Virus record (IMG/VR): IMGVR_UViG_3300046653_000093
Span: 124,001 to 188,000 of that record
Reading direction: 5' to 3' (one strand)
Length of the DNA: 64,000 nucleotides
Notes under the pieces: model-generated
Seen by the model: the letters and a program-made list of their open reading frames with translations, nothing else
What the model was told of the DNA's origin: nothing
Database searches by the model: none
Program-made: the position numbers and the translations under genes
Shown here: piece by piece, positions 1 to 59,019 of the stretch
Layout: every line of letters starts with the position of its first letter
Numbering within the stretch: position 1 is the first letter of the stretch

Positions 1-96
1 TGCGTTTATATAAATGCTACTAAGGCACTTGCCGTTTTTGGATTTGGCAAGTTCATTACAGTCGTTGATTGTTATCTTCCTATATTGATTAGACAT
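1..96 (-). CDS. Partial CDS (runs off left edge): zinc-ribbon-repeat/endonuclease-associated protein
   Basis: Manual translation from ATG at 96 gives MSNQYRKITINDCNELAKSKNGKCLSSIYINA..., resembling the xTIxxxxxxAxxxGGKCLSxxYxN repeat of phage/giant-virus endonuclease-like proteins. Not in the ORF track (too short). Confidence 0.55.
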   Translation of the reverse strand, partial: MSNQYRKITINDCNELAKSKNGKCLSSIYINA

Positions 97-129
97 AGCA
101 TTCCTATCAGTAAGAATATATAATTATGC

Positions 130-810
130 CTATTTATTGCCCCATATTTCTATAAACGTTTTCTTAGACTTCAAATACAGATCTGATAATACTTTCTTCC
201 CGGTAACTCTGCCAATGTGTCTGACAGGCACATCAACAACTTTAAACTCAATACCAAGGCCCTTAGCTCTAAAGGATAGGTCAGTATCCTCGAAGTAAGA
301 TATGAACTTAGTAGAAAATGGACCAACATCGCCTTCTAGAATCAAACGATCCCAAGTAGCAACAGAGGCAGTGATATTCCATCCGCTTAGGTAGAAAAGA
401 AACCCAGTCGTAGGAAGCTTGTTCATCTCACGAACAAAGTTCAAATGAATATCTAACAGCCCAATGGTTGGACCTACAAGGAACCCATTTTGAGCCTCAC
501 GAATAATAGGCTCTGTCCACACAGAATTTTCCTCGGCAATACGAATATCATTGTTGAGGAACATTATGTTTTCATAACCGAGACTGACAGCCCTTTCGTA
601 ACCAGTATTGCACCCCTTAGCAAACCCAAGATTCTTGGAATGTCGTACGACAGACAATCTGGCTGATGATTGTAGTTGTTTGGTACTGTCTGTGCTTCCA
701 TTATCCACTACAACAAACCCATGGTCTTGTGGAAGATGGGATAGATCTGATAATGCGCGCTTTGTATATGCCCAATTGTTCCAGGCCGGAATAACGATAG
801 CTAAACTCAT
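130..810 (-). CDS. Glycosyltransferase family 2 (GT-A; WbbL/rhamnosyltransferase-like)
   Basis: Motifs IVIPAWN, VVVDNGSTD, NLGFAKGCN, FLNND and YFEDTDLSFRA. Confidence 0.9.
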   Translation of the reverse strand: MSLAIVIPAWNNWAYTKRALSDLSHLPQDHGFVVVDNGSTDSTKQLQSSARLSVVRHSKNLGFAKGCNTGYERAVSLGYENIMFLNNDIRIAEENSVWTEPIIREAQNGFLVGPTIGLLDIHLNFVREMNKLPTTGFLFYLSGWNITASVATWDRLILEGDVGPFSTKFISYFEDTDLSFRAKGLGIEFKVVDVPVRHIGRVTGKKVLSDLYLKSKKTFIEIWGNK

Positions 811-822
811 TTATTTCTCCAT

Positions 823-1944
823 TCAAGGTACGCACATGTCTATAATTTTTTGGGCTGCATTATTCCAAGTGAACTTGCTAGCAGTATCTGTCATATTTTG
901 AGCAAACCCAGCTTTCAATGAATCTAATTCAAATACAGCCCTTCGAAGTTTTTGGGCAGCGTCATCAGTATCAATCTCAAAATGAACAGCAAATGGATTG
1001 AATGCCCAATATTGATGATCTCTTGGTGCCCTTGTGATTGTGCCATCTATAAGAATAGAATTCTCATCATTACAGAAATCTAGTTGTCCACCATATCTAG
1101 GAACTACATTAACAATTCCAGAAGCTAGAGCTTCCAATGATGGTAGATGCCAACACTCAGCATAAGTAGCAGAGAAATTTATATCACAAGACTTATAGAT
1201 GTCTGCGATATTTGTTATATATGAATGGACAAACTCTACTTCGGCGTGCTGTGGAAACTTAGATTGAAAAGTTTTAAACAACGCAGTGAAGTCTATGTCA
1301 AATGGATGGTCTTTCTTGTTATGCTTGAATACTTTAGCTATCAAACATACATCATCATCCTTGGTAAAAGCTTTACCAAAAGCCTTAAGAGCTAAATGTA
1401 ATGCTTTGCGCCGATGTGGCTGGGCAATATTAAGAAGTATCTTCTTTGTCTTCCTAGTATTTAGCTTGAATGTATTATCACTCTTGAAATCTTCAAGATT
1501 TATTCCATGAGGAACTACCATCATCTTTTCTATGGGGATACCCATACTAATAAATACATCTCTAGAGAAATTAGATGAAGGAAGAACAAGGTCAGTTGAT
1601 TTGTAAAACTTAGAAAAACCTTGAAGTAATGCTAAGTACTTATCATCTGACCTTTTATTGTTGTATTCGTAATTCCAAATACCAAATCTATTCTTTGTAC
1701 CCCATTTAAGATAATTTGGCCAATTATGAGGTGCTGTGTAGCTAATTTGGCAGTCATATAATCCAGATGGTTCTTGTTTAACAAATGGCATTATATCCTC
1801 TGGTATAAATCTCTTTTCAAGTCCATCTGTAGAAATAAACTCTACATTATGTCCTAACTTAATAAGTGATCTGCCTAAATTCTGCCCAACCACACTCCAA
1901 CTATGATTTTGGCCAAATAGAAATTGTTGGATTTTTATTCTCAT
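823..1944 (-). CDS. Glycosyltransferase family 4 (GT-B)
   Basis: PSSNFSRD, VVPHGINLEDF, RRK, E-x7-E motif ECWHLPSLEALASG, C-terminal FTWNNAAQKI. Confidence 0.9.
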   Translation of the reverse strand: MRIKIQQFLFGQNHSWSVVGQNLGRSLIKLGHNVEFISTDGLEKRFIPEDIMPFVKQEPSGLYDCQISYTAPHNWPNYLKWGTKNRFGIWNYEYNNKRSDDKYLALLQGFSKFYKSTDLVLPSSNFSRDVFISMGIPIEKMMVVPHGINLEDFKSDNTFKLNTRKTKKILLNIAQPHRRKALHLALKAFGKAFTKDDDVCLIAKVFKHNKKDHPFDIDFTALFKTFQSKFPQHAEVEFVHSYITNIADIYKSCDINFSATYAECWHLPSLEALASGIVNVVPRYGGQLDFCNDENSILIDGTITRAPRDHQYWAFNPFAVHFEIDTDDAAQKLRRAVFELDSLKAGFAQNMTDTASKFTWNNAAQKIIDMCVP

Positions 1945-1982
1945 ATACTATATGAGATATTGAATTACATATCCTCGACTTA

Positions 1983-2117
1983 TTACTCGCAATCACCTGC
2001 ATCGCAAGCTACCGCTCCGGCATCCGAAACAGATGCATCAGCTTGGTGATTTGGCTTGTTGGTACAAGAGACTAATAAAACCGACAAAAACAAAAACAAT
2101 GCAACGAACCCTTTCAT
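1983..2117 (-). CDS. Small lipoprotein (44 aa)
   Basis: Manual translation MKGFVALFLFLSVLLVSC-TNKPNHQADASVSDAGAVACDAGDCE: basic N-terminus, hydrophobic core, lipobox LVSC; GGAGA RBS upstream. Not in the ORF track. Confidence 0.75.
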   Translation of the reverse strand: MKGFVALFLFLSVLLVSCTNKPNHQADASVSDAGAVACDAGDCE

Positions 2118-2131
2118 TTTATTCTCCATTT

Positions 2132-2189
2132 TAAAGCAGCAATACCCAGTCACTCATAAATGAATGGCATTAGGTAACTACTGTTTTAG
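2132..2189 (-). promoter_or_regulatory. Long imperfect RNA hairpin just 5' of the lipoprotein RBS
   Basis: On the - strand UAAAACAGUAGUUACCUAAUGCCAUUCAU pairs with AUGAGUGACUGGGUAUUGCUGCUUUA using several G-U pairs. Confidence 0.4.
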
Positions 2190-2193
2190 TTTT

Positions 2194-5193
2194 TTATGTT
2201 ACGCCAGAAGCGAACAAACCAGCAACTTGATTTGATGGAATCACCAATGGTGTATTATTCCATCCGGCTTTCTTGAGATATACCGTGATCATGATCTTGG
2301 TTCTCAATTCGTTATACAAGGCACTATTTGATATATCATTCATCGTAAGCGTCATCAAGCCAGTAGCCTGGTCCATATTTACGCCAATGATATTATCTAC
2401 AATAATACCGTAGCCATCCTGATCCATTCCATCCTGATTTGGGAATATTGATTGAATCGACACACCAAATCTCACTTGATTTTTAACAAATGCATCAAGT
2501 TTTACAGTAGTACAATCAGAAAACCTAGCCGCCGGATATCCAGCTGAAGTAAAACCATCTCCATCGTCTACAACAAGTTTCTGGAACACGTTGATTATAG
2601 CGTGATTGAACATTACCTCTTGCGGAAGTTCCAAGACAATAAAATGAATGTCAACGTCTTGCTTGAAATAGTTGCCATCCTTATCGATGATTTGCCCTTT
2701 GCCAATAATAAGATTATCCGGAACGAAGAAATCATTTCTTCCAGGATCGCATGCGCCTCCGAATTCAAATGGATCTATGCAAACAACAGGAGTTGTATTT
2801 GAGCACTGACCAGTTATTTGATCTACCAAGCTAGCAGTTGAGCTGGGAAATGTAAATGTCGCAGGAACAAGCCTGGCATTACTACTAACTTGAAGCATGT
2901 AGTCTTTCCAGAACAATATTGGGTTTACAACAAATGGTAGTGGGATAAATGGCACTGCAAGGAAAGCAGGATCATCAGCTGAAATATCCGGTATGCTATT
3001 ATAACCGTAGTATTGTAGCTCAATACTAGACAAATTAGATATATCTACTACATTTAGACTATCACCATTGATTCTAATATACCCATCGCAATTGTTGTAT
3101 CCATCATAACGACAGCAATCATAATAACCATCATAACGACCGGTTGGGTTTTGAACCTCTATTTCAAGGTGCGTAAAGCTAGAGCCTGCTGGGAATGAGT
3201 GATAGCCGTCCTTAGAAACATATGCTGAAATCCTATCAACATCTGCATGCGTAATATAGCCATCTCCATCAACATCAGCTCGAATGATCTCTAGAGTATC
3301 AAAAACCCCAGCATTAATTAGAGCCTGCGTTGATTCTAAAGATAACGATTGCCCAAGGAGAGCTGTGGCACGATCTATATCGCTTGAGTCAATAACTCCA
3401 TCGCCATTAACATCTCCATACCCATCTGTGCACAATCGTACGTTAGAAATGGTGTAACCAATACCTGCGCAATTATTATTTGGAATTAGTTTGCTACCAA
3501 TAAGCTGCTGCGAAATCAAATCAGGATTTGGATTTATTACAATAAACTTATTGCCCTTAGCTAATCCAGGGAAGATTTGAGTACCAGAAATTATGTTGTT
3601 CACTTTGGCATTGACATCTCGCGCACAGCCAATGATCAAAGGATCATTAGATTCACTCAATGTAGCCAAGTTGGCATTGGTAACGAAACTAAAACTTGGT
3701 TCGAACTGCTGGCGTGAAAAAACTGGATTGCCAGTACGCTCATCTTGTTGCTGTTGAGATTGTGATTCAATAGCTTCTACTACAGCAGTGTTTAGAGTGT
3801 TTTGCCCGGTATCTGCAAATGGGTTTTGGCCAAATGAATAATCTACAACCGCACCCAGTTCATTGACTATGGTCTTTGTAATCTGGACACCATTACCAGC
3901 ATCATAGGCCATACCATCAGCAACCTTGGCGGCATCTGACCATACTTGATACCAAATATCTTCTTCTGTAACATCTGTCCATTCACTGGTGAATATGGAA
4001 AGACGATCATCTGTACTCTGACTGTTTCCTATTCCCGTAAACAAAGTACCAACGCTACTGTCTCCGGCACGTCCAATTGAAATGGCATAATATTTACCTG
4101 GTACAATAACAGGATTTGATGCGTTACCAAGAATTGAATTGTTGTATATCAGGTCAATTGGTTGAAGAACATCAGTAAGAATGTAACCTAGATTCTGCAA
4201 GCTTTGCTTGTTGATGCTAAACTGAGTTATCGGAATAGGATTTGGATCAAATTCAATTGCCAACCCAGGCACCAATTCATTTGGAGAAGTAATGGTGCTT
4301 TGAAGCTCGTATACACTAACTACAAGCTCTCCACTCCAATCGAAATAATTGGCTATAACCGAACCATTCTTACGAACGCCAAGTAGAACGGTAATCTTCT
4401 GGATATTATTGCATTTGGCCAAAAACTTTTCAGCTACACGCGTTGTAACATCTCCAGTAGCAAATTCAAAATCTCGCTTCACAGTTGTATTGATTTGAAG
4501 AGCATCAACATTATATTGAGGCCCAATACCTGCCTGAATCGTTTGAGCTAAGGTAACCGCTGGGTTTGGAGATGAGTTTTTGAAATCTCTGAAAAATAAG
4601 TTCGGTTGCACATCTTGTGCAATCATAATAGGATCGCGAGACAACTCAAGTGCCGTTGTTTCTCGGATAACTACACGTCCCCCTAGAGCACGAGAACAAT
4701 TGTCATTACCAAGAAAGTCATTAAAGAATACCGAAAGTATTCGGGTGTAGTGTTTCTTGGTAACTTGCTTCTCTTTCTTGTAAAAGTAAAAACTATCGTA
4801 TTGTATGTTTTCCTGGAAATCCAAACCAATAATCAATACCTTGGTACTGAGACGGCCTCCAACATTCGAAAACCCATTAGCATCAGAATCAGATAGTTCT
4901 ACTTCAAGTTGATTTCCCAACTTACTATCACTCGGTTGCGCTAATGGCCTCAGACCAGTACCATCTAAATCGTGAGATGCTATCAGTGCCTCTTGATCAG
5001 AGAACATATTATCAGTATCAAAAACTACATTTTGAGCCGATGCAGATGGAAGTACGCCCGAGCCAAAGTGATTTTGTATAATCGAAGCATCAATCTTGAC
5101 ATTCCGATCTTGCTCTGTAGTCATATCGGTCTGATCGACTTGCTGACCGTCGTACCAAAGAACTTGAATTTGTGATACTGGATTTTGGTTCAT
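2194..5193 (-). CDS. Tail/baseplate-associated virion protein with a dockerin-like (paired EF-hand) domain
   Basis: Directly downstream of the wedge genes; GDVNGDGVIDSSD...ADVDGDGYITHAD duplicated Ca-binding loops; 7 DGY motifs. Confidence 0.6.
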   Translation of the reverse strand: MNQNPVSQIQVLWYDGQQVDQTDMTTEQDRNVKIDASIIQNHFGSGVLPSASAQNVVFDTDNMFSDQEALIASHDLDGTGLRPLAQPSDSKLGNQLEVELSDSDANGFSNVGGRLSTKVLIIGLDFQENIQYDSFYFYKKEKQVTKKHYTRILSVFFNDFLGNDNCSRALGGRVVIRETTALELSRDPIMIAQDVQPNLFFRDFKNSSPNPAVTLAQTIQAGIGPQYNVDALQINTTVKRDFEFATGDVTTRVAEKFLAKCNNIQKITVLLGVRKNGSVIANYFDWSGELVVSVYELQSTITSPNELVPGLAIEFDPNPIPITQFSINKQSLQNLGYILTDVLQPIDLIYNNSILGNASNPVIVPGKYYAISIGRAGDSSVGTLFTGIGNSQSTDDRLSIFTSEWTDVTEEDIWYQVWSDAAKVADGMAYDAGNGVQITKTIVNELGAVVDYSFGQNPFADTGQNTLNTAVVEAIESQSQQQQDERTGNPVFSRQQFEPSFSFVTNANLATLSESNDPLIIGCARDVNAKVNNIISGTQIFPGLAKGNKFIVINPNPDLISQQLIGSKLIPNNNCAGIGYTISNVRLCTDGYGDVNGDGVIDSSDIDRATALLGQSLSLESTQALINAGVFDTLEIIRADVDGDGYITHADVDRISAYVSKDGYHSFPAGSSFTHLEIEVQNPTGRYDGYYDCCRYDGYNNCDGYIRINGDSLNVVDISNLSSIELQYYGYNSIPDISADDPAFLAVPFIPLPFVVNPILFWKDYMLQVSSNARLVPATFTFPSSTASLVDQITGQCSNTTPVVCIDPFEFGGACDPGRNDFFVPDNLIIGKGQIIDKDGNYFKQDVDIHFIVLELPQEVMFNHAIINVFQKLVVDDGDGFTSAGYPAARFSDCTTVKLDAFVKNQVRFGVSIQSIFPNQDGMDQDGYGIIVDNIIGVNMDQATGLMTLTMNDISNSALYNELRTKIMITVYLKKAGWNNTPLVIPSNQVAGLFASGVT

Positions 5194-5195
5194 AT

Positions 5196-8100
5196 TTACT
5201 TCACATATTTAATACCAACCGTAGAAACGGCCGGCTTGAGGGCATTGATCAAGGCCTCCAACACGGTTTGGATACGAAGATCTCCTGTAACTATGTTAAA
5301 AGAATCAATGATATTGATGTCAAAATTGAAAATGCCGAAAGTTGGATCGTAAATTACCGCGAAATCATCTGTTTTTTGTACAGATTTATCGAAGTCAAGC
5401 AAGAAAGTTGTGAAAGCATCCGTAATAGATGGGTAGATGAAGTCCGTATTACTGTTGAAGTAAACGTCTCGCGGCTGTCCTGCTATTACAATAGGATCAA
5501 TTGCTTTGTTCGAAATCTTCAAGTTATCAAATCTCGCCTGAGCTCCAAAGTTTCCTGCGAAATCTTGTCCAACCGAGAACTGCTGTACAGTATCAGTAAA
5601 GTTTATATCAGATCTGAAGATTTGGCTTCCCACTCCACCGACAGCCGCCTGGCCCCAGATGACACCTTGCCCGAACAACATATTGCCTTGTCCGAATAGT
5701 TGCGCCCCTCGTTCCTCTCCATCTACGAATAGACGAATCTCATCGTTATTGTCTTTACGATTGAACTTGAATGACGCACGAATTCTATGCCATGTATCGC
5801 GAGGCCAGAACACAGGCTGTCGAACTTGATATTCTTTGCTATTGGCATTTATGGTGAAGCAAATAAAGCCCTGTGGATCTTTGGAGATTGTCAACCTATC
5901 TCCACGAACACCAGTTGGAATATATGCAACTTTTACCGGAGTGTTCTGATATGGCAATGGAGTATTCAAGATGAGAGTTCTTCCATCACTGGCAATACTT
6001 CCACCATTGAAATATTCAGTTCCCTGCAAAGTTGTATCGTTAACCAAGCGCACATACAATACGCTACTGGCTCGTCTAGATAGTTTAACACGACCCTTCG
6101 TGATGCTTACGTCTTCTTCGATGATATTAGCAGCGGCATCGAAGTATATTCTAACTCCAGGATCATTATAGGTATCATATCTTGGGCTTATCCAGAACTC
6201 AATCAAACCTTCGCTGGCTGTGTTAAGCAAACCGCCATTATCAAATATAAGGCCTCTATCTTTGATTACTATACTGTGACCAAATTTTGAATTGACACTG
6301 CTGCCAGATTGAACGTATTCCTTACTTGCAAAGGTATAGAAATCGCTATCATTAATTAGCGGTAGAGATTCACAATGGAACAAAGCTAGCGTATCTATAT
6401 TCTTAACAAACGGAGATATCTTGGTTGCTCCGGTTGTGATAGATTCCTCATTGTTACCAATCGTTTCGCCAATACGAGTATCCGTAAGTTGTCTGTTCAG
6501 AATTCTAATCTCATCAAGAATACCCTTTACTGGATTTTGTAATGTGATATCATTTCCAATTATTCCAGTTTCCTTTGTCAAAGGATCAAATGGTACGGAT
6601 AGATAAGAGGCAAAGTCAATATCATACCATCCTGGCGGCAACATAAAGGCAGAATCGGTGAAGCCTGCTATCTCCAAAAATATGAATCCGTTTTGGAATC
6701 CACTACGCCCAATGCTGATATTGTACGCAGCATAAGATCCATTGGTGAAGTACCCATCAACACTATGATCTAGTTGAATCGTATAGTTATCTATTTTGTC
6801 TATTATCTTGTAGATACCAGCCGAAGATGGCGGCGAGGTAATTTTGAGCAAGTTACCAACAATAGATGCTGGGAAGTAGCCTTGTAGATCCCTAACTATG
6901 GTATAGCCACCATAGCCATCAGATTCCAAAGAGCCACCAGACTGAGTTTGGTATGCGAACCTAATAACCGGATACAGGTTGTTTCCGTTAGGCTGTGTAA
7001 TTGTGTATGCCTCTTTTATTTCAACGGCTATACTATCGTCGTAGCCATCAATTGGAGCCACATCTACAATAATCGAATCAACTTCTTGCCATTTATTTAC
7101 TGTAAGTTTCTTACCAGGATATGTAAATGTAAGTGTTTCGCTTGTTACGGATCCCAAGGCAGCATATCCATCTAGCTTCACAGTTACTGGAACTGAGAAA
7201 TTAACATTATCTCCAGTAATACGCACTTCCAATATGCGGCCTTCTGTAAGTAAAGCATTTGAATTTTGCAAGAATGTACTTGGTTGTGTGATATCGGCAT
7301 TCTCTCCTGGTCCTGTTCCGAAAATTAAATTATCCCCATAACCGTCAACTAGGAAATTTCCAAAATCATCAATTAAGTAGATAAAACTAGTACCTCCAAA
7401 AGTTGCCTCAAAAATATATCCATCTATCACGGCTGAATTTTCTGGACCGATTGAAGTCAATGGCAATACAACAGTCTTAATAGACACATCATCCAGATTG
7501 ATTGGAGGAGGAAGCCCAGTTTTAAGTAGAGAATTATTACTCCACAGGAATACCCTATCCTTAGATCGCCTATGGTTCAAACCAAACGTTTTGATAAGCA
7601 CAGTATCGCCGGCTAGGGTGTTATCAAAAATTGTCAGAATCCTCTGGTTAAGAGTGTTCCTATCAATTGAGTAAGAAGGGACTCCAGCTCTTGTTCCTGG
7701 AATTTCACGTTCATTTCCATATCCGTCTACAATAAATACACCTATGTTCTTGTAGATATCAATCTCAGTTCCGACAATAAACTGTGGCGGATTAATGATA
7801 AATCTAGCATCATTCAAAGAAGCTGACATATTGGCACTCAAGGTCATCTGAGTCCCCGATGCATTGGATATTACATACTTACCAAACCCTTGTTCCATGA
7901 TGTCAATAGTGTACCCATCATCAAGCGCAGATAGACTTAAGGATGGAGATATTACAATATTAGATCCTTGGGTTGTTATAAGGTCATTGCCAGTTATTGA
8001 ATTTGCAAATACAACCCCAACGATCTGTTCTGGAACCACTGTTCTAAATCTATTATAAGATGCAACATCTGGAATATTACCATAGCGCGCAAGGTTTGGA

Positions 8101-11100
8101 GTTTCAAAACCGTCAACATACAGGTGCATTTCATCTCTACGATCTGAGGAGTTTAGACTCCAAGAGATACCAATAGTATGCTTTTGTCCAGAGCCCCAAT
8201 TTTGTATATCGGCGCTTACTTGGTATACATTTTTTCGGTCTGGTTGTACCAATCCAAAGCCACCACGATCCCATACTTCGAAGACCAAATACCCTCGGCC
8301 GTCCTTGTATAAAGAGAATCGATTCTGAGTTTCATTCTTACCAAAATCGAAGAAATAATGTCGATCGTCTGACATTAATTGAATGCCATCAAACGAAACA
8401 CCTGGGATATATCCATCGCCATATTCATACCCATCAGGGCTGAGAACATCATAGCCATCCAGATGGAATTCAAATTCTACTGTCGAAAGCCCAGACCGTA
8501 AAATGTCAGTATCCTCTGCAAGCCCAGGAACAAAATTCACATCATAGAATGAACCAGATGTGGTAACCGTACCCGAATATACATATCCGTCAGGAACATC
8601 CTTGGCAAGAATCTTCCAATGTTTGATATCAGTGTCATAATAAATGAATATGCCATTTCTGATAAAGATCAAAGCTGGAAGGCCCTCTGGGCTATTCTCA
8701 TCTGTTCTATTGACAGAGAATGTCCCATTCGCAATGGTTGGGTTATAACATCTAGATCCAATATAAATGTTTTCTGCTGGAACTACATAGCCATCTTTGA
8801 ATAGCTCAAAGGTCAAGGTGGCATCATTGTCGATACCATCCCAATCAGTAATAACTGACAACTCAAGAGTTCCTTCTTCCAGTCTCAAGTTGTTGGAAAT
8901 TGGAAGGGTTGCTCCATCTCCAGCTTTCAAAACTGCCAAACCCTGATCGAAGAATCCGGCAGATAAATATGGCGTTCCAAAAACGGAAGATGGTACCTTT
9001 GACAAGAAACTAACGCCTAAAGACCAAAATGCTGCCTCTACAATTTTAGGATCAATTTGGGTTACGCTGGAAATCAGTTCCTTCATTGCCGGTATTGTTG
9101 GACCTTGCGTAAATGTCTGCAAAGCTCCCTGAAGGATATCGCGGTAGATTTCACGATCCAATTCCTCATCAAATACTTGAAGCTCTGGAATTTGAACTAA
9201 AGTTCCGAAGTTCTGAAGCAAGGAGTTGCGCAAAGCTCCAATAGAATACGTTGTGTAATAAGTATCTCCTTCTTTGAATGTATTACTGGTACGATGATCA
9301 ATAACATTATCGCCCCATTCATACGAGACTAAAAGTTCATCTGTTACACTTGAATAATCAACAAAAAAATCTCCACGGTTGTAATCTACAATTGGAGTTG
9401 CCTCTCCATTCATTATAACGGTGTATTGGACATTAACAACATCACCAGAAACTGCAAATGCGTTACTTAGATAAATGACGTTACCAAGAGAATATGTATA
9501 TCCATCGACAAGCTGATATCCATCACTTACTCTGATAACACTTGTGACTTCTCCTACTTCAATGCCCGCTGATATAAATGGTACAGTAATTGTTAGAGTA
9601 CCACTTACCACCTCTTGTGATGTTTGAGCAATTCCTCCAAGGGTAATTACATTGGCCGAGATGGTTGCCGAATCTGCAAAGTTTATTGGGCTTACATGAT
9701 TGTTTAGATCGTACGCGTCATACAGACTACGAAGCGTATCGATATCATCAGTTACCGTAATCGTGTTCTCAAAAACGAAATAAGGATTCGTTGGGTCTTT
9801 GTTTGTGAAGCGCTCATCCGAAACGTCCATGAGGCTTGGTGTTGGGGTTATGGCCGCTTCTCCAAATGAAATGTAATCCAAAATCTTCGAAGGCCCAAAG
9901 TTTGGATTTATACTGTTGTAGACTTGAGAAACTGAGACAACATGAGGATTTACAGGAGAGATAACAGGAATCTTGTAAGAGACCGTTCCAATGCTAAGGC
10001 TTTGATTATTCGTAACTCCTACATATATAATACCATCGCGATAATTTATTTGATACTGACCAATAGATAGCCTGTTGGTATTAATTATCTCTGATAATTC
10101 TTGAGAATCATAATATACCTCAGTAACAAAAACATCATTCTGACTAAAACCAACGCTAGTATTAAAGCTAGACCCAATCACATCATCGGTGTTACCCATG
10201 ATATTTTGGTTCATGACTCTTATTTTTAGCACGCGAACGCTAAAGGCATTGACAAGCTCATTCTCAAGAATCAATGACTCATTCAAAACAGAAGCAAAAG
10301 ACGCCCTCTCTAGAGTGATATTGGTAATTTTTGGTGGAGTTCTTGAATCAAAGAATATCTTGTTATCAGTGATTCTTCTGAGCGTATATATTTCTCCAGT
10401 TGTTTCGTTGTAGATTCTAAAAACATCTGTAATTGGTGCGTTTATAGTATATAGCGAATCCAATGTTGCAAGGCGATTTTGAACTCGCTCATTCAAACTC
10501 TCAACATGTACATTGGCTACATAGTCAATACCAGGGACATAGGTTTGCTCAAAAAGATAGTTGATCTTTGCTGTTTGTGTCACCAATTCTCGAAGAGGGG
10601 ATGCGACAAGATCTCTAAACTCAGGAACATAGGTATAGTCTAAACGAGAAATATATGTTTTTCGGTAGTAGTAATTCATGGCCGGAGGGAAATCTCCAGT
10701 TCCATCATTTTTAATCGCTCCGTAAACGAAAACACGACCGGTTGTATAATCAACCGAATATTCTCCAGGATAATTTGGCAGACCGCCTTCACGATACGGA
10801 ATTTCATTCGAGAAAGCTGGATGAGTATCAATGAACGGAGTCGCTGAATAAGGATCTAAGAACTGAACACCGCCAGATGTTGGTATTTTATCTCCGGCCG
10901 TAACTACCGGAGCATTTTGCAGCGAAAACATCGTGGTAATTGCAGGAGCAACTTCTCTGATAACCTGATTTACCTGAACAACAGAAACGCTAGTATCATC
11001 GATGATACGACCCAACGATTTGTATTCGTAAGAAACTACAATCTTATCATTACCGCTAGGGAGCACAAAGGTTGGATCGTCTTTTAGAGTGTCATTAAGT

Positions 11101-11993
11101 TTGATTTGGTTATTGGCAAGTGTAATCAAACGACGACCGAATGCAGTATCATATTTAGGATCACTGATTTGGTATCCTAGCGTTCTAATATCGTAGGCAA
11201 AGGTATAGCCATCTGAATATTTTATTGTAACTGAAGTTAATTTGGTAACTGGAAGCTTATTCAGCGTCAACGTCAAATCATTATATGTTCCCTTTCCAAT
11301 ACCAAGTACTAAAATCTCATTGGTAACAACATCCCGTTGTAGAGTTATTGGGTCTGATGGGAAACTATCGAAAGCAATTACCCCTTGTATTGTTTCGTCT
11401 GTTGGGGTTAGTCCAACACGCCAAACTTGAAAAGCTCCCTCTTGATTAAGGCGATCCCAAGGACCAAAATTACGAGTTTTCAACTCATCTTTTACGAGAA
11501 TTTCAAGATAATTAGCTGACTTTGCCTGGCCAACATCAGCTTGGGCTTTATTCAATAAATTTGAAGTCTGATTTAATATAGTGCGTACGAATGTTTCACG
11601 AGATAGATTGTAAACACTTTGAGGACCACCCAATAATGTTACTAGGTTATCGCGAGTTGGGTTGTAATCATTCTCGGCTCCTAAGACTCTGGCAACGTTG
11701 GCACGCCCATCTTCAAGCAAGAACTGACGATTGTCTAAGCTTCTGAACTTTACAGCATTTGTAGATTGAAAAACTACCTTGTATCTAGCATATGGAGTTT
11801 GAGGTAATGTGCTAATAATGAAGATATCATCAGCGACCTCAACTGTAAGAACTTCAACATCTGGAACATTTACAACCTCAGACAACACCAATACATTTGA
11901 TTGCCCAATATCAACTGCTAGCGCGGCTGAAAACCTTACCTTAATCGTTCTGCTATCGGCCGCATTTATGTCCAATATTCTAAGATTTGCCAT
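5196..11993 (-). CDS. Very large baseplate wedge protein (P2 gpI/T4 gp7-like core) with LamG/concanavalin-like domains
   Basis: Follows gpJ-like gene. Wedge-like segment LLQNFGTLV...YRDILQGALQTFTQGPTIPAMKELI and C-terminal ALKPAVS; LamG-like strands (EGTLEL, HTIGISW...LYVDG, GILDEIRI, WHRIRASF...LFVDG, FDNLKIS); 16 DGY. Confidence 0.7.
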   Translation of the reverse strand: MANLRILDINAADSRTIKVRFSAALAVDIGQSNVLVLSEVVNVPDVEVLTVEVADDIFIISTLPQTPYARYKVVFQSTNAVKFRSLDNRQFLLEDGRANVARVLGAENDYNPTRDNLVTLLGGPQSVYNLSRETFVRTILNQTSNLLNKAQADVGQAKSANYLEILVKDELKTRNFGPWDRLNQEGAFQVWRVGLTPTDETIQGVIAFDSFPSDPITLQRDVVTNEILVLGIGKGTYNDLTLTLNKLPVTKLTSVTIKYSDGYTFAYDIRTLGYQISDPKYDTAFGRRLITLANNQIKLNDTLKDDPTFVLPSGNDKIVVSYEYKSLGRIIDDTSVSVVQVNQVIREVAPAITTMFSLQNAPVVTAGDKIPTSGGVQFLDPYSATPFIDTHPAFSNEIPYREGGLPNYPGEYSVDYTTGRVFVYGAIKNDGTGDFPPAMNYYYRKTYISRLDYTYVPEFRDLVASPLRELVTQTAKINYLFEQTYVPGIDYVANVHVESLNERVQNRLATLDSLYTINAPITDVFRIYNETTGEIYTLRRITDNKIFFDSRTPPKITNITLERASFASVLNESLILENELVNAFSVRVLKIRVMNQNIMGNTDDVIGSSFNTSVGFSQNDVFVTEVYYDSQELSEIINTNRLSIGQYQINYRDGIIYVGVTNNQSLSIGTVSYKIPVISPVNPHVVSVSQVYNSINPNFGPSKILDYISFGEAAITPTPSLMDVSDERFTNKDPTNPYFVFENTITVTDDIDTLRSLYDAYDLNNHVSPINFADSATISANVITLGGIAQTSQEVVSGTLTITVPFISAGIEVGEVTSVIRVSDGYQLVDGYTYSLGNVIYLSNAFAVSGDVVNVQYTVIMNGEATPIVDYNRGDFFVDYSSVTDELLVSYEWGDNVIDHRTSNTFKEGDTYYTTYSIGALRNSLLQNFGTLVQIPELQVFDEELDREIYRDILQGALQTFTQGPTIPAMKELISSVTQIDPKIVEAAFWSLGVSFLSKVPSSVFGTPYLSAGFFDQGLAVLKAGDGATLPISNNLRLEEGTLELSVITDWDGIDNDATLTFELFKDGYVVPAENIYIGSRCYNPTIANGTFSVNRTDENSPEGLPALIFIRNGIFIYYDTDIKHWKILAKDVPDGYVYSGTVTTSGSFYDVNFVPGLAEDTDILRSGLSTVEFEFHLDGYDVLSPDGYEYGDGYIPGVSFDGIQLMSDDRHYFFDFGKNETQNRFSLYKDGRGYLVFEVWDRGGFGLVQPDRKNVYQVSADIQNWGSGQKHTIGISWSLNSSDRRDEMHLYVDGFETPNLARYGNIPDVASYNRFRTVVPEQIVGVVFANSITGNDLITTQGSNIVISPSLSLSALDDGYTIDIMEQGFGKYVISNASGTQMTLSANMSASLNDARFIINPPQFIVGTEIDIYKNIGVFIVDGYGNEREIPGTRAGVPSYSIDRNTLNQRILTIFDNTLAGDTVLIKTFGLNHRRSKDRVFLWSNNSLLKTGLPPPINLDDVSIKTVVLPLTSIGPENSAVIDGYIFEATFGGTSFIYLIDDFGNFLVDGYGDNLIFGTGPGENADITQPSTFLQNSNALLTEGRILEVRITGDNVNFSVPVTVKLDGYAALGSVTSETLTFTYPGKKLTVNKWQEVDSIIVDVAPIDGYDDSIAVEIKEAYTITQPNGNNLYPVIRFAYQTQSGGSLESDGYGGYTIVRDLQGYFPASIVGNLLKITSPPSSAGIYKIIDKIDNYTIQLDHSVDGYFTNGSYAAYNISIGRSGFQNGFIFLEIAGFTDSAFMLPPGWYDIDFASYLSVPFDPLTKETGIIGNDITLQNPVKGILDEIRILNRQLTDTRIGETIGNNEESITTGATKISPFVKNIDTLALFHCESLPLINDSDFYTFASKEYVQSGSSVNSKFGHSIVIKDRGLIFDNGGLLNTASEGLIEFWISPRYDTYNDPGVRIYFDAAANIIEEDVSITKGRVKLSRRASSVLYVRLVNDTTLQGTEYFNGGSIASDGRTLILNTPLPYQNTPVKVAYIPTGVRGDRLTISKDPQGFICFTINANSKEYQVRQPVFWPRDTWHRIRASFKFNRKDNNDEIRLFVDGEERGAQLFGQGNMLFGQGVIWGQAAVGGVGSQIFRSDINFTDTVQQFSVGQDFAGNFGAQARFDNLKISNKAIDPIVIAGQPRDVYFNSNTDFIYPSITDAFTTFLLDFDKSVQKTDDFAVIYDPTFGIFNFDINIIDSFNIVTGDLRIQTVLEALINALKPAVSTVGIKYVK

Positions 11994-15000: not shown

Positions 15001-15262
15001 CAATCGATGGAGACCCTTGCTTACGAGACGCGCCAAAATTGGATGCTAAGGCGTCCAATTCTGAACCTAAAGACAGGAATAGCGATTGAGCTGATTGAAC
15101 GCTCTGCAATTCTTCATACAAGCTTCCCAATTGAACAGCTGGGCCGTCAATAAGAAGATCACGAGCCACCTGACCAGGTTGTAGGTCAAGTTGTGGCTGC
15201 GCAGTTCTGTAAAAATCTATACTTCCGAGAACAATATCATTTGCAGTCCTAACCCGTGCCAT
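12005..15262 (-). CDS. Baseplate wedge protein, gpJ/gp6-like
   Basis: ELDALASNFGASRK, GSNGNI, VTNAASFQGGASAETDSSFKRRI, GTALGY, and C-terminal VNGVDRV; GAGGT RBS. Confidence 0.9.
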   Translation of the reverse strand: MARVRTANDIVLGSIDFYRTAQPQLDLQPGQVARDLLIDGPAVQLGSLYEELQSVQSAQSLFLSLGSELDALASNFGASRKQGSPSIGTAILTFNSIEADIPINAGGVVTASNGASFTVINSFTVAVNNKNTYRATASKYSAALAFAAITDQYAVEAQVTATSTGSNGNISSYSLNNTTIPGVSNVTNAASFQGGASAETDSSFKRRILGIFSGSNTGTALGYKNTIIADSDVIDCLVVGPGDPLMTRDGTQVFTAADGTKTIVSEGTGGKVDLYAYGFRLVEIIDGFIYFDHSNKDDPTDPSNDFVLGQITTDANKTVSRKRIDDINNQQLPNQPVTNIISITGSSSGSNFALKSVDASRVVSGNYELLRDTGVYAGSPWGFDRLHWVDDRIRDLAEDITKGKFNSQDSTNFSDVTLISAVNQNIQIVNENSNVSPADRSSIQLSHSPITAVTRVFNQTTGERYIVTNQNPDGGSQNTTGRITISGSTLPAVSDILQVDYVWIFNYDLNWDFDNKVSSDNIRDVVDSIDWGYSNVVRREESVVTGVNTKTVTVTHPVNAVVSINVFTDGYGFVQLISNRLAVVVTGLVSNVVSVVESSNNDEVFNTGTKDGSFSGFTVYLPTDTTAQIGDLVNIRYNAIDQFISNGISGSFSDNVITLPSSTNVVAGTIVEVNYLANINQLVPSTALSTLPIFRNDNGFYFGTGNIFGTQPTTHIYFPNPSPIPNTALPIEFNLRKAPTRLKLTIAGTISPGVITVSGTTIQGVFDKILTATANGLVQDFSSLIRTALGLNSNQSIPSNLTIISLVGFEKVELSGTEVISIDHVYDVFGYSIRDNSFSKFEATSNSSLTPTQIAIPNTVGNNANLPKIGDKIRVTFYISKTSDIENVSFSKSGTLYTQKRFAFVDVVSISSGFTSTTSQSATLSIAPQNQPVQGTRYTAYYDYLAPKPNERITIHYNANQVITDNTFNIERTRPIGADVLVKAAVPILVNITLAIVVSPGFDTSSAVVLQNVEDAVTNSLNSTALATTIDSSDFINVAYTVNGVDRVRILEFNKDGAAGQVLSITAQSNQYIQANNVLAKLDTR

Positions 15263-57660: not shown

Positions 57661-59019
<1,359 letters not shown>

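What the first reader, a model, noticed from the sequence alone, without database searches (positions are those of the whole stretch)
130..1944. GT4 + GT2 glycosyltransferase pair at the distal end of the tail/baseplate operon
Seen: two intact GTs, co-oriented and directly downstream of the DGY-rich tail genes, separated from them only by a tiny lipoprotein gene. Phage GTs can modify DNA, the host surface or virion proteins. Placement in the late structural cluster favours virion glycosylation (inference). Candidate acceptors in the window are DGY tyrosines and the Thr-rich GXT collagen. More GTs may lie beyond the left edge.
Basis: partly seen in the sequence, partly recalled or inferred. Interest (0 to 1): 0.65.

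Follow-up and report, generated by a model that had tools for sequence, protein, structure and literature searches.

The report
Tail-linked sugar-adding gene island, huge phage
The two sugar-transferase genes are real and are the first genes of a roughly 17-kb sugar-chain-building gene island that sits right after the tail genes in a whole clade of very large soil and peat phages, but whether it sugar-coats the virus particle or the host surface is still open.

Summary
Window 823-1944(-) encodes a 373-aa GT4 (retaining GT-B, invariant E-x7-E). Window 130-810(-) encodes a 226-aa WbbL-like GT2. The window is part of a ~392-kb phage, and the pair heads a ~17-kb island. The island holds at least 9 GTs (GT4, 4x GT2, GT10, GT11, STELLO-like, GT9-like), three NDP-sugar SDR enzymes and an FkbM methyltransferase. 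It ends at tubulin and UvsW genes. In 66 of 67 related IMG/VR loci a GT4 ortholog follows the 999-aa tail protein gene. GT4 has co-diverged with that tail protein (r = 0.90). The inner part of the island varies between relatives. No island protein is polytopic. The phage has no Wzx/Wzy-sized membrane protein, no sugar nucleotidyltransferase, no integrase, and a canonical thyA-DHFR pair with no TET/JBP. DNA glycosylation is therefore unlikely. The acceptor remains inferred: a phage (virion) protein is my best reading (~0.45), and host envelope glycan remodelling is a serious rival (~0.33). Tail adjacency alone does not decide this, because Sf6 keeps its O-antigen acetylase right after its tailspike gene. 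GT4 probably starts its own transcription unit. This is a new member of a known kind of viral glycan cluster, of moderate interest.

The parts
823..1944 (-). GT4-family retaining glycosyltransferase (373 aa). It is the first gene of the glycan island and a core gene of the phage clade.
   Evidence: Pfam and PHROG hits. E263-x7-E271 is invariant in 7 orthologs. AF2 model plus Foldseek to PimA, MshA, BshA, PglA and chlorovirus NY-2A 3oy2. An ortholog lies after the tail gene in 66 of 67 loci.
130..810 (-). GT2-family (GT-A, WbbL-like) glycosyltransferase (226 aa), the second gene of the island.
   Evidence: PF00535 E 1.4e-12. Best NCBIfam hit is the rhamnosyltransferase TIGR01556, but far below its cut-off. 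Invariant DNGS.D, NND and EDxDL motifs. PDB 6p61 E 8e-15. Present in 50 of 63 relatives with at least 7 kb of flank.
1967..1979 (-). Promoter-like motif GTCGAGG overlapping GATATGT, 23-35 nt before the GT4 start codon.
   Evidence: GTCGAGA occurs 16 times in upstream regions against 1.3 expected. It sits at the same place before GT4 in L009, L015, L016, L042 and L043. Its function as a promoter is inferred.
1983..2116 (-). Small lipoprotein ORF (lipobox LLVSC) between the tail gene and GT4.
   Evidence: Sequence read directly. Lipobox ORFs occur at the same place in L068, L078 and L088/L091. No family hit.
1..96 (-). 5' end of a 331-aa DUF4379 treble-clef zinc-finger gene that interrupts the island. 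It is probably a mobile insertion and continues left of the window.
   Evidence: Pfam DUF4379 E 8e-10. It is absent, a remnant, or in a different position in relatives. A paralog lies elsewhere in the genome.
2194..5193 (-). 999-aa distal tail/baseplate protein with dockerin-like Ca-binding loops and 7 DGY motifs. It is always the gene before GT4 and is a candidate acceptor.
   Evidence: Dockerin_1 E 5e-7. DGY count. Synteny.
5196..11993 (-). 2265-aa tail/baseplate protein with 16 DGY motifs and a ConA-like lectin domain. It is a candidate acceptor.
   Evidence: Laminin_G_3 E 7e-7. DGY count. Conserved synteny.
12005..15262 (-). Baseplate J / gp6-like wedge protein. It anchors the call that the upstream genes are baseplate/tail genes.
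   Evidence: phrog_6 E 5e-32. Baseplate_J E 4e-21.
57661..59010 (-). Collagen-like fibre protein with about 37 consecutive G-X-T triplets. It is a candidate O-glycosylation acceptor by analogy with BclA.
   Evidence: Translation. Tail-fibre/collagen PHROGs, E down to 3e-27.

Best explanation
The GT4 + GT2 pair is the conserved head of a self-contained, entirely soluble glycan-assembly island of a ~392-kb, probably virulent, contractile-tailed phage.

Shown:
- The island spans G000 109033-125944, of which window 1-1944 is the right-hand end.
- It encodes at least 9 glycosyltransferases.
- It also encodes an RmlB-type NDP-hexose 4,6-dehydratase, an Fcl-type epimerase/reductase, a third SDR and an FkbM methyltransferase.

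Inferred mechanism:
- The phage draws on host NDP-sugars, since it has no nucleotidyltransferase of its own.
- It converts part of them to 6-deoxyhexose donors.
- In the cytoplasm it builds an O-methylated, deoxyhexose-containing oligosaccharide directly on a phage-encoded protein that ends up in the virion.
- The most conserved enzyme, GT4, attaches or extends the inner, conserved part of the glycan. The variable downstream GTs (GT10, GT11, GT2, and GT6 in relatives) make the lineage-specific outer part.
- Likely acceptors are the distal tail/baseplate proteins encoded just upstream or the GXT collagen-like fibre.
- The likely purpose is a variable glycan coat on exposed virion parts, for stability, adhesion, or masking from host or environmental recognition.
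For: - Family, fold and motifs of both enzymes.
- Island content.
- No island protein has more than one hydrophobic segment, and the 91%-complete genome has no Wzx/Wzy/OTase-sized polytopic protein. The machinery therefore suits a cytoplasmic acceptor, which is where virions are assembled.
- No PF00483 nucleotidyltransferase.
- DNA route unlikely: canonical ThyA (TIGR03284 281 bits, cut-off 108) next to DHFR, and no Tet_JBP.
- GT4 follows the 999-aa tail gene in 66 of 67 related loci, down to 31% tail-protein identity. It is directly adjacent in 25 of them.
- GT4 identity tracks tail-protein identity (r = 0.90; means 46% and 45%). It is therefore an old, vertically inherited core gene, not a sporadic moron. 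This fits an acceptor inherited with the phage rather than a host-specific one.
- The conserved head and variable interior resemble glycan loci under diversifying selection.
- A putative late-type motif, GATATA[TG], is enriched before structural genes (7/34 against 11/250, p = 0.002). It also precedes GT4 in 7 of the loci listed and two island genes here.
- No tyrosine integrase, so lysogenic seroconversion is not the obvious role.
- Precedents: mycobacteriophage capsid/tail-tube glycosylation (as cited in PMC12619734); chlorovirus and Megavirinae autonomous glycosylation clusters (PMC9614988, PMC10117803); Thr-linked rhamnose/methyl-deoxyhexose glycans on the GXT collagen-like protein BclA (PMC6222408).
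Against: - No direct evidence for any acceptor. The phage is uncultured.
- Adjacency to the receptor-binding gene is also where temperate phages keep host O-antigen-modifying genes (Sf6 oac).
- The small lipoprotein next door would fit a superinfection-exclusion module.
- Soluble GTs can also act on host lipid-linked intermediates at the inner face of the membrane, with host flippase and ligase doing the export. Lack of phage membrane proteins is therefore not decisive.
- GT9-like, GT4, GT10 and GT11 enzymes are typical LPS builders in bacteria.
- The whole region (tail genes - island - tubulin - UvsW) is collinear across the clade, so conserved adjacency may just reflect a stable backbone.
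- GT4 has its own promoter-like motif, and terminators precede it in L040, L042, L043 and L045. Co-transcription with the tail genes is therefore not established.
- Neither GT is related to mycobacteriophage virion GTs.
- Fusion partners of GT4 in distant relatives are other GT domains, not protein-binding domains.
Confidence: 0.45

Rival explanations
1. Host envelope remodelling. The soluble phage GTs act at the cytoplasmic face on host lipid-linked intermediates (Und-PP-sugar or lipid A-core). The host's own flippase, ligase or ABC transporter then exports the altered glycan. This changes the receptor polysaccharide of the infected cell. The result is superinfection exclusion, or prevention of progeny loss on cell debris. 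The linkage to the receptor-binding genes exists because the two must match the same receptor.
For: - Sf6 keeps its O-antigen acetylase immediately after its tailspike gene.
- Analogous multi-GT/GDP-fucose/methyltransferase islands in cyanomyoviruses are usually read as host cell-surface modification (PMC12801897).
- GT9-like, GT4, GT10 and GT11 families are LPS/O-antigen builders (established knowledge).
- A lipobox lipoprotein, reminiscent of T5 Llp (my knowledge), lies between the tail gene and GT4 in this subclade.
- A SASA/SGNH esterase domain in a 1167-aa structural protein suggests an acetylated surface polysaccharide receptor.
- GT4 has its own promoter-like motif and upstream terminators in relatives.
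Against: - No priming polyprenyl-phosphate transferase, flippase, polymerase, ligase or Gtr-type membrane protein anywhere in the 91%-complete genome.
- No integrase.
- GT4 is a clade-wide core gene that co-diverges with the tail protein across lineages that presumably infect different hosts with different surface glycans. This is harder to reconcile with a host-specific lipid-linked acceptor and host flippase specificity.
Confidence: 0.33
2. DNA hypermodification. The GTs glycosylate hydroxymethylated bases of the phage genome to evade restriction, as in T-even phages and the systems of Pyle et al. 2024.
For: - Phage GTs are classically DNA-modifying (reviewed in PMC12619734 and PMC12801897).
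- The island is followed by replication-type genes (tubulin, UvsW helicase).
- A second GT1-family ORF lies 4.5 kb from thyA.
Against: - The only PF00303 member is a canonical thymidylate synthase above the equivalog cut-off, paired with DHFR, about 270 kb from the island.
- No Tet_JBP (note that the control genomes also did not ring).
- No match to the T4 alpha- or beta-GT families in the Pfam scans.
- Nine or more GTs plus deoxyhexose synthesis and sugar methylation far exceed any known DNA glycan.
- The genome is only 91% complete, so absence is not absolute.
Confidence: 0.05
3. Another cytoplasmic acceptor. The island makes a free or lipid-anchored oligo/polysaccharide, or glycosylates a non-virion phage or host protein (for example to disarm a defence or sensing protein). 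Its position after the tail genes is historical.
For: - A phage-specific unknown protein (338-aa family) sits inside the minimal island of distant relatives, and several island ORFs have no family.
- The distant GT4 fusions hit the Pfam 'GT4-conflict' family.
Against: - There is no positive evidence.
- The size and diversity of the island suggest an exposed, diversifying glycan rather than a single regulatory modification.
Confidence: 0.15

Closest known systems
Mycobacteriophage virion glycosylation (Che8-type; Freeman et al. 2023, as cited in PMC12619734 and PMC12801897)
   Same: Phage-encoded soluble GT genes lie beside the structural genes. In those phages the glycans are attached to capsid and tail-tube proteins in the cytoplasm.
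   Different: There is no detectable sequence relationship (tblastn of both GTs finds no mycobacteriophage). Those phages have 2-4 GTs, against a 17-gene island here. Genome size and phage type differ. Glycosylation is not demonstrated here.
Autonomous glycosylation clusters of giant viruses (chlorovirus A064R etc.; Megavirinae fibril clusters) (PMC9614988, PMC10117803)
   Same: - Virus-encoded cytosolic GTs occur together with a 4,6-dehydratase and an epimerase/reductase for 6-deoxyhexoses, and with sugar methyltransferases.
- Cluster content is clade-specific.
- Relatives have multi-domain GT-GT and methyltransferase-GT fusions.
- A chlorovirus NY-2A GT (3oy2) is the second-best structural match of GT4.
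   Different: Those are eukaryotic viruses of another realm. Similarity is at fold and family level only (15% identity). The acceptors there are the capsid protein or fibrils and are known; here the acceptor is unknown.
Cyanomyovirus 'LPS / cell-wall synthesis and modification' islands (P-SSM2, S-SCSM1, S-SCSM2R)
   Same: - Large contractile-tailed phages carry a block of many GTs (GT2, GT10/NodZ, GT11), GDP-fucose-type SDR enzymes and methyltransferases, with no export machinery.
- The island GT11 is 35% identical to S-SCSM1 gp126.
- The function is also unproven there (PMC12801897).
   Different: There the island lies among auxiliary metabolic genes (hli, petF, 2OG-oxygenases) and is not fixed to the distal tail genes. 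It is sporadic among cyanophages. Here GT4 is a clade-wide core gene.
O-antigen conversion genes next to the tailspike gene of temperate podoviruses (Sf6 oac; P22 gtrABC from my own knowledge)
   Same: A glycan-modifying gene lies directly after the receptor-binding protein gene, with its own promoter.
   Different: Those enzymes are integral membrane proteins acting on the exported O-antigen in lysogens. Here all proteins are soluble, and there is no integrase and no Gtr-type component.
BclA-type collagen-like glycoproteins of Bacillus exosporium (PMC6222408)
   Same: A GXT collagen-like fibre is present, together with deoxyhexose synthesis, WbbL-like GT2s and sugar O-methylation. In BclA the glycan is a rhamnose trisaccharide capped by a 2-O-methyl-4,6-dideoxyhexose.
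   Different: This is an analogy only. No homology of the GTs was tested. The collagen gene lies 56 kb from the island.
T4-type DNA glucosyltransferases and TET/5hmC-linked phage GTs
   Same: They are phage-encoded soluble GTs.
   Different: They belong to different families (no PF09198/PF11440 hit). This genome has no hydroxymethyl-base synthesis gene.
Moraphages (large aquatic phages with four core GT orthogroups; PMC12619734)
   Same: It is a lineage of large uncultured phages in which several GTs belong to the core genome and their role is undecided.
   Different: Kinship to this clade was not tested. Those genomes reach 307 kb and are aquatic. This clade reaches 392-473 kb, and for the window's phage near-identical pieces were seen in peat and permafrost RNA libraries.

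Membership tests
CAZy GT4 / Pfam Glycos_transf_1 (retaining GT-B) | C-terminal Glycos_transf_1 domain above Pfam's gathering score | tested here: met
   28.2 bits against 26.4 (marginal). Glyco_transf_4 N-domain 28.6 against 28.5. phrog_2170 E 4e-32. PF00534 also rings at this place in the genome scan.
CAZy GT4 / Pfam Glycos_transf_1 (retaining GT-B) | Two-Rossmann GT-B fold | tested here: met
   AF2 model with pLDDT 69.5 and pTM 0.68. Foldseek probability 1.00, TM 0.62-0.68 to PimA, BshA, PglA, GlgM and 3oy2.
CAZy GT4 / Pfam Glycos_transf_1 (retaining GT-B) | E-x7-E motif in the C-terminal domain | tested here: met
   E263 and E271 are invariant in 7 orthologs at 65-81% identity.
CAZy GT4 / Pfam Glycos_transf_1 (retaining GT-B) | Retaining transfer from an NDP-sugar to a defined acceptor | not testable with these tools
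   Needs an enzyme assay.
CAZy GT2 / Pfam Glycos_transf_2 (inverting GT-A) | PF00535 domain above the gathering score | tested here: met
   48.3 bits against 23.3. Full-length match to the solved GT-A 6p61, E 8e-15.
CAZy GT2 / Pfam Glycos_transf_2 (inverting GT-A) | Acidic nucleotide/metal-binding motifs (DxD-type) and an acidic base motif | tested here: met
   Invariant D41 (DNGS.D), N86-N87-D88 (a variant of DxD) and E174-D175-x-D177. Assignment of roles is by analogy.
WbbL-type rhamnosyltransferase (NCBIfam TIGR01556) | Score above the family cut-off | tested here: not met
   It is the best NCBIfam hit, but at 44.1 bits against a cut-off of 200.55 and covering only residues 26-116. The protein is WbbL-like in motifs, not a member.
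Phage virion-glycosylation systems (mycobacteriophage type) | GT genes adjacent to structural genes | tested here: met
   GT4 follows the 999-aa tail gene in 66 of 67 loci.
Phage virion-glycosylation systems (mycobacteriophage type) | Homology to the known virion GTs | tested here: not met
   tblastn of both GTs against 50,697 phage records finds no mycobacteriophage.
Phage virion-glycosylation systems (mycobacteriophage type) | Glycan on capsid or tail proteins | not testable with these tools
   Needs virions or co-expression, plus glyco-MS.
Phage DNA glycosylation systems | Enzyme that makes a hydroxymethylated base (dCMP/dUMP hydroxymethylase or TET/JBP) | tested here: not met
   The single PF00303 gene is a canonical ThyA (281 bits, cut-off 108) beside DHFR. 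There is no PF12851, although the controls for PF12851 were silent too. The genome is 91% complete.
Phage DNA glycosylation systems | GT of the T4 alpha/beta-GT families | tested here: not met
   No such Pfam family among the hits.
Gtr-type / Wzx-Wzy-dependent O-antigen modification | Membrane components (GtrA flippase, membrane-anchored GtrB, polytopic GtrC; or Wzx, Wzy, WaaL; or a polyprenyl-phosphate priming transferase) | tested here: not met
   A hydropathy scan finds no island protein with more than 1 hydrophobic segment. Only 7 ORFs in the genome have 3 or more segments, and none is of Wzx/Wzy size. The GtrB-like PHROG hit is weak (E 1e-4, N-terminal 89 aa only). The scan is a simple Kyte-Doolittle window, not a trained predictor.
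Gtr-type / Wzx-Wzy-dependent O-antigen modification | Temperate lifestyle (integrase) | tested here: not met
   No PF00589 in the 91%-complete genome. Serine recombinases were not searched.
Multi-GT glycan islands of large myoviruses (cyanophage CWSM/LPS islands) | Contiguous block of several GT families plus NDP-sugar SDR enzymes and methyltransferase, without export genes | tested here: met
   S-SCSM1 comparison.

The most novel reading that the evidence does not exclude
A globally distributed clade of huge (about 200-470 kb) soil, peat and sediment phages carries a core, vertically inherited, tail-linked and fully autonomous protein-glycosylation system. The system coats exposed virion fibres (DGY-rich distal tail proteins and/or the GXT collagen-like fibre) with lineage-specific glycans. 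These glycans are methylated, deoxyhexose-rich and possibly Lewis/ABH-like (GT6, GT10 and GT11 are present). This would be the bacteriophage counterpart of the giant-virus fibril glycosylation clusters. It would also be the first such system outside actinobacteriophages.
Probability: 0.4. Interest if true: 0.75.

Novelty: new member of a known kind. Interest (0 to 1): 0.5.

Why it matters
Virus-encoded glycan islands are common in large phages, but their targets are almost never known. This case offers a clean test bed.

- One conserved GT4 is fixed next to the tail genes across more than 60 genomes.
- A minimal 5-6-gene version of the island exists in distant relatives, and an expanded 17-gene version exists here.
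- There is a short list of candidate acceptors.

If the target is the virion, phage particles in soils and peat would carry their own variable glycan coats. That bears on adsorption, particle stability, recognition by hosts and grazers, and glyco-engineering of phages. If the target is the host envelope, the island would be a receptor-editing module genetically coupled to the receptor-binding proteins in a virulent huge phage. Either answer can be reached by co-expression and glyco-mass-spectrometry without culturing the host.

Tried and rejected
- **Megablast against phages.** Megablast of window 1-6000 against 50,697 phage records found no match, so there is no close cultured relative.
- **Fold of the conserved 319-aa island protein.** The model has pLDDT 51, too poor for a fold search. 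Only the language-model lead (GT9-like, 0.96) and its Rossmann-like secondary-structure pattern are reported.
- **338-aa family of the minimal islands.** No Pfam hit, and only virus-only hypothetical clusters in the Atlas. It is unrelated to the 319-aa protein.
- **RNA evidence.**
  - Two metatranscriptome libraries (peat, permafrost) hold a few 151-279-nt contigs that are 100% identical.
  - One contig (1912-2062) bridges the lipoprotein ORF and the GT4 start.
  - These are contigs, are sparse, and may derive from DNA carry-over, so they show neither timing nor an operon.
- **Host inference.** The nearest cellular homologs of the Fcl-like enzyme are scattered phyla at 36-40% identity, which is not informative.
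- **GTCGAGA motif as an 'early/non-structural' promoter class.** It is strongly enriched in upstream regions (16 observed, 1.3 expected). Its split between structural and other genes is not significant (p = 0.70), so no timing claim is made from it.
- **The one exception, L070.** Its contig is only 18% complete and has no GT4, so loss cannot be told from rearrangement.
- **Fusion partners of GT4 in distant relatives.** I looked for protein-binding domains (e.g. TPR) and found only further GT, methyltransferase and intein domains.
- **Second GT1-family ORF near thyA.** No PDB sequence match.
- **Searches not run.**
  - Complex prediction was not run, because enzyme-substrate contacts are transient and I do not claim stable binding.
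  - The two large protein searches were not run.
- **Genetic code.** No alternative code was used; all frames are open under table 11.
Full report
**1. The observation**

Window 823-1944 and 130-810 are two intact ORFs on the - strand, of 373 and 226 aa, 12 nt apart.

The 373-aa protein:
- It reaches Pfam's thresholds for Glycos_transf_1 and Glyco_transf_4, marginally, and matches phrog_2170 (glycosyltransferase) at E 4e-32.
- An alignment of seven orthologs shows an invariant E263-x7-E271 motif.
- The AlphaFold model (pLDDT 69.5) matches retaining GT4 GT-B enzymes. These include PimA, MshA, BshA, PglA, GlgM and a chlorovirus NY-2A GT. Foldseek E is about 1e-12 and TM 0.62-0.68.

The 226-aa protein:
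- It matches PF00535 at E 1.4e-12.
- It aligns end to end with the solved GT-A 6p61, E 8e-15.
- It carries the invariant DNGS.D, NND and EDxDL motifs of WbbL-like GT2 enzymes.
- It is far below the cut-off of the rhamnosyltransferase model TIGR01556.

Upstream genes:
- A small ORF has a signal peptide and the lipobox LLVSC.
- A 999-aa protein has dockerin-like Ca loops and 7 DGY motifs. A 2265-aa protein has a ConA-like domain and 16 DGY motifs. From their composition, about 0.2 and 0.7 are expected.
- A Baseplate_J / gp6-like protein lies further upstream.

**2. What surrounds it**

The window is bases 124001-188000 of a 215,808-bp IMG/VR record. That record is a 99.997%-identical fragment of a 391,957-bp record, 91% complete.

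To the left of the window the same strand continues with these genes:
- a DUF4379 zinc-finger gene
- GT2
- a 319-aa protein that a language-model search places next to GT9 heptosyltransferase-like clusters (0.96, a lead only)
- GT2 with a Glyco_transf_7C tail
- an SDR related to 4,6-dehydratases and UDP-xylose synthases
- a 241-aa unknown
- a GT10 fucosyltransferase-like gene (the only gene on the + strand)
- an FkbM methyltransferase
- GT2
- a GT11 alpha-1,2-fucosyltransferase-like gene
- two unknowns
- DUF4254
- a STELLO-like GT
- an Fcl-like epimerase/reductase (237 bits to GDP-L-fucose synthase, below its cut-off)
- a 515-aa unknown
- an RmlB-like 4,6-dehydratase (212 bits)

After these come a TubZ/PhuZ-like tubulin and a UvsW helicase.

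The pair is therefore the head of a ~17-kb, 19-ORF island, including the DUF4379 insertion (G000 109033-125944). The island GC is 36.9% against 41.6% for the genome.

**3. What the island lacks**

- A hydropathy scan finds no island protein with more than one hydrophobic segment. In the whole 392-kb genome only seven ORFs have three or more segments, and none is of Wzx/Wzy/oligosaccharyltransferase size.
- There is no PF00483 sugar-1-phosphate nucleotidyltransferase, so donors must come from host NDP-sugars.
- There is no tyrosine integrase.
- The only thymidylate-synthase-family gene is a canonical ThyA (281 bits, cut-off 108), immediately followed by DHFR, about 270 kb away. No Tet_JBP was found, although the control genomes were silent for that family too.

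A DNA-glycosylation role therefore lacks its substrate-making enzyme. Nine or more GTs also far exceed any known DNA glycan.

**4. Relatives**

- Searching IMG/VR with GT4 gave 31 loci (GT4 identity 36-100%) on contigs up to 459 kb.
- Searching with a profile of the 999-aa tail protein gave 142 confirmed matches; the 77 distinct loci kept lie on contigs up to 473 kb.
- In 66 of the 67 tail-protein loci with at least 3 kb of downstream flank, a GT4 ortholog follows the tail gene. It is directly adjacent in 25. In the rest, 1-5 ORFs intervene, several of them homologs of LAGLIDADG-like, LigT/Acb1-like or multi-copy genes of this phage.
- The exception (L070) is an 18%-complete contig.
- GT4 identity to the window's protein tracks the tail protein's identity (r = 0.90; means 46% and 45%). 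GT4 is therefore an old, vertically inherited core gene.
- Distant relatives have a minimal island: GT4, GT2a, a ~280-aa unknown, a phage-specific 338-aa protein, GT2b, the RmlB-like gene, then tubulin and UvsW.
- The window's subclade has inserted the 319-aa protein, GT2c and a variable block.
- Among 63 loci with at least 7 kb of flank, presence counts are: GT4 62, GT2a 50, GT2b 48, 338-aa protein 34, RmlB-like 32, 319-aa protein 23, GT2c 22, GT10 8, GT11 2 (the flank limits the last figures).
- Fusions in relatives are GT4-GT4, GT2-GT6, methyltransferase-GT2 and GT1_2-GT2. One RmlB-like gene carries an intein. No protein-binding partner domain was found.

**5. Transcription signals (inference from sequence only)**

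- In the 392-kb genome, GTCGAGA occurs 16 times in the 80 nt or less upstream of genes, against 1.3 expected.
- GATATA[TG] occurs 20 times against 4.0 expected. It is concentrated before structural genes (7/34 against 11/250 upstream regions, Fisher p = 0.002).
- GT4 of this phage is preceded by GTCGAGG overlapping GATATGT (window 1967-1979).
- GTCGAGA sits at the same place in five relatives. GATATA[TG] sits there in 7 of the loci listed.
- A perfect hairpin plus T-run separates the tail gene from GT4 in L040, L042, L043 and L045.

GT4 therefore probably starts a transcription unit of its own. In this phage no terminator is visible, so read-through from the tail genes is also possible. The timing class is unknown.

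RNA-library contigs from peat and permafrost are identical to the window. One bridges the lipoprotein ORF and the GT4 start. They are too sparse to show expression pattern and may derive from DNA.

**6. Mechanism**

Shown:
- Two soluble GTs, one retaining GT-B and one inverting GT-A, head a soluble multi-enzyme glycan-assembly island.
- The island has deoxyhexose-forming and sugar-methylating enzymes.
- It is conserved next to the distal tail genes.

Inferred:
- The RmlB-type dehydratase and the Fcl-type epimerase/reductase make an NDP-6-deoxy-L-hexose (rhamnose- or fucose-type).
- WbbL-like GT2s and GT10/GT11 enzymes transfer it, and FkbM methylates a sugar.
- The conserved GT4 acts on the inner part of the glycan or on the acceptor itself. 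The variable enzymes build the outer part.

The acceptor is the open point. I favour a phage-encoded, virion-destined protein (0.45) for four reasons:
- Only cytoplasmic, membrane-independent enzymes are present.
- Virions assemble in the cytoplasm.
- GT4 is a co-diverging core gene rather than a host-specific accessory.
- Working precedents exist in mycobacteriophages, chloroviruses, Megavirinae and the GXT collagen-like glycoprotein BclA (PMC12619734, PMC9614988, PMC10117803, PMC6222408).

The window does encode a fibre with about 37 G-X-T triplets.

The main rival (0.33) is remodelling of the host's surface glycan through host lipid carriers and exporters:
- The position directly after the receptor-binding gene is exactly where Sf6 keeps its O-antigen acetylase.
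- A lipobox lipoprotein sits beside GT4.
- A SASA-type esterase in a 1167-aa structural protein points to a polysaccharide receptor.
- Analogous cyanophage islands are usually read that way (PMC12801897).

DNA glycosylation (0.05) and other cytoplasmic acceptors (0.15) remain.

**7. Comparison and novelty**

Neither GT is close to any GT of a cultured phage:
- GT4: 22-28% identity to Streptomyces phage and Microcystis phage GTs.
- GT2a: only weak hits in unannotated records.

The island as a kind, a virus-encoded autonomous glycan cluster, is known. New here are three points:
- It is fixed to the tail module across a large clade of huge phages.
- Its head gene has core-gene status.
- There is a clear series from a minimal to an expanded island.

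I file it as a new member of a known kind. Interest is moderate (0.5). It would rise to about 0.75 if virion glycosylation were shown.

**8. Limits**

- The phage is uncultured, and the host is unknown (one search was uninformative).
- ORFs were called by a simple longest-ORF rule.
- The transmembrane scan is a Kyte-Doolittle window.
- Many of the 67 loci are related, and some are near-duplicates from different samples. '66 of 67' therefore counts contigs, not independent events.
- The promoter motifs are statistical inferences.

Noticed in passing
window 1983-2116 (-): A small ORF with a signal peptide and the lipobox LLVSC lies between the 999-aa tail gene and GT4. Unrelated-looking lipobox ORFs occupy the same slot in L068, L078 and L088/L091. 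A receptor-masking or superinfection-exclusion lipoprotein next to the receptor-binding gene (as T5 Llp, from my own knowledge) is one reading.
   Followed up: partly
window 1-96 (-) and G000 123101-124000; paralog G001 22765-23763: A DUF4379 treble-clef zinc-finger gene interrupts the island. It behaves like a mobile gene: it is absent in most relatives, a 51-aa remnant in L009, and at other positions in L013, L040 and L045. The paralog has three DUF4379 copies.
   Followed up: partly
G001 genome-wide; e.g. window 1973-1979: The motif GTCGAGA(G/A) lies 20-50 nt upstream of about 16 genes (HNH-AP2 endonucleases, NADAR, IMPDH/GMP reductase, RNase T-like, HAD/PMM-like, DUF4379) against 1.3 expected. 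It is a candidate phage promoter or regulatory site of unknown class.
   Followed up: partly
G001 structural block, e.g. upstream of window 15262, 30699, 63668: The motif GATATA[TG] lies 13-48 nt upstream of structural genes (7/34 upstream regions against 11/250 elsewhere, p = 0.002). It is a candidate late promoter element.
   Followed up: partly
window 47588-51091 (-): A 1167-aa protein in the structural block carries a SASA/SGNH carbohydrate esterase domain (E 3e-7). It is probably a receptor-deacetylating tail spike, which implies an acetylated polysaccharide receptor.
   Followed up: no
window 53752-54840 (-): A class-V aminotransferase (cysteine-desulfurase-like, PF00266 E 4e-28) is encoded inside the structural gene block, near the collagen-like fibre gene.
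   Followed up: no
window 42364-43176 (-); also window 33868-34554 (-): A LAGLIDADG-like homing endonuclease gene and a 228-aa multi-copy unknown lie here. Homologs of both are inserted between the tail gene and GT4, or inside the island, in several relatives.
   Followed up: partly
L100:15392-17491 (IMGVR_UViG_3300032328_001458): The RmlB-like 4,6-dehydratase gene of a distant relative is split by an intein (Intein_splicing E 2e-7; the product is 699 aa instead of about 320). Inteins usually sit in conserved, important genes.
   Followed up: no
L089:12954-15563, L127:12397-13788, L095:11154-17135, L103:13441-18803: Relatives carry multi-domain GT fusions: GT2+GT6, methyltransferase+GT2, double GT4, and GT1_2+GT2 (up to 1228 aa). 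With GT10 and GT11 the clade holds the enzyme families that make ABH/Lewis-type glycans in other organisms.
   Followed up: partly
L095:10902-11114, L097:15082-15333, L108:13186-13374: In the most divergent relatives, small ORFs with a shared, conserved sequence directly precede the GT4 fusion gene. To my eye they look ribbon-helix-helix (CopG/Arc-like), which would hint at separate regulation of the island; this was not tested.
   Followed up: no
L070 (IMGVR_UViG_3300015214_000030): This is the only one of 67 loci where the 999-aa tail gene (60% identical) is not followed by GT4. Downstream genes match G000 ~85-90 kb, which implies a ~36-kb deletion or rearrangement. The contig is only 18% complete.
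   Followed up: partly
G001 15905-17134 (+): A second GT1-family ORF (409 aa; PF00534 33.6 bits) lies 4.5 kb from the thyA-DHFR pair, outside the island. There is no PDB sequence match, and it was not characterised further.
   Followed up: partly
G000 107624-109018 and 105610-107088 (left of the window): A TubZ/PhuZ-like tubulin and a UvsW-type helicase directly follow the island. This order (tail genes - GT island - tubulin - UvsW) is conserved across the clade.
   Followed up: partly
G001 235506-236285 (-): A HAD-family protein has a phosphomannomutase-like match (PF03332 E 2e-8) and is preceded by the GTCGAGA motif. It may link to sugar metabolism, although no nucleotidyltransferase is encoded.
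   Followed up: no
window 2194-5193 and 5196-11993 (-): DGY is strongly over-represented (7 and 16 copies against about 0.2 and 0.7 expected). Several copies in the 999-aa protein lie in dockerin/EF-hand-like D-x-D-G-D-G loops. The motif may therefore be a Ca-binding or turn motif rather than a glycosylation site.
   Followed up: partly
window 60325-62013 (-): There is a sub-threshold match to Latrotoxin_C (20.5 bits, cut-off 25, E 4e-4) in a 562-aa protein of the structural block. It is probably not meaningful.
   Followed up: no
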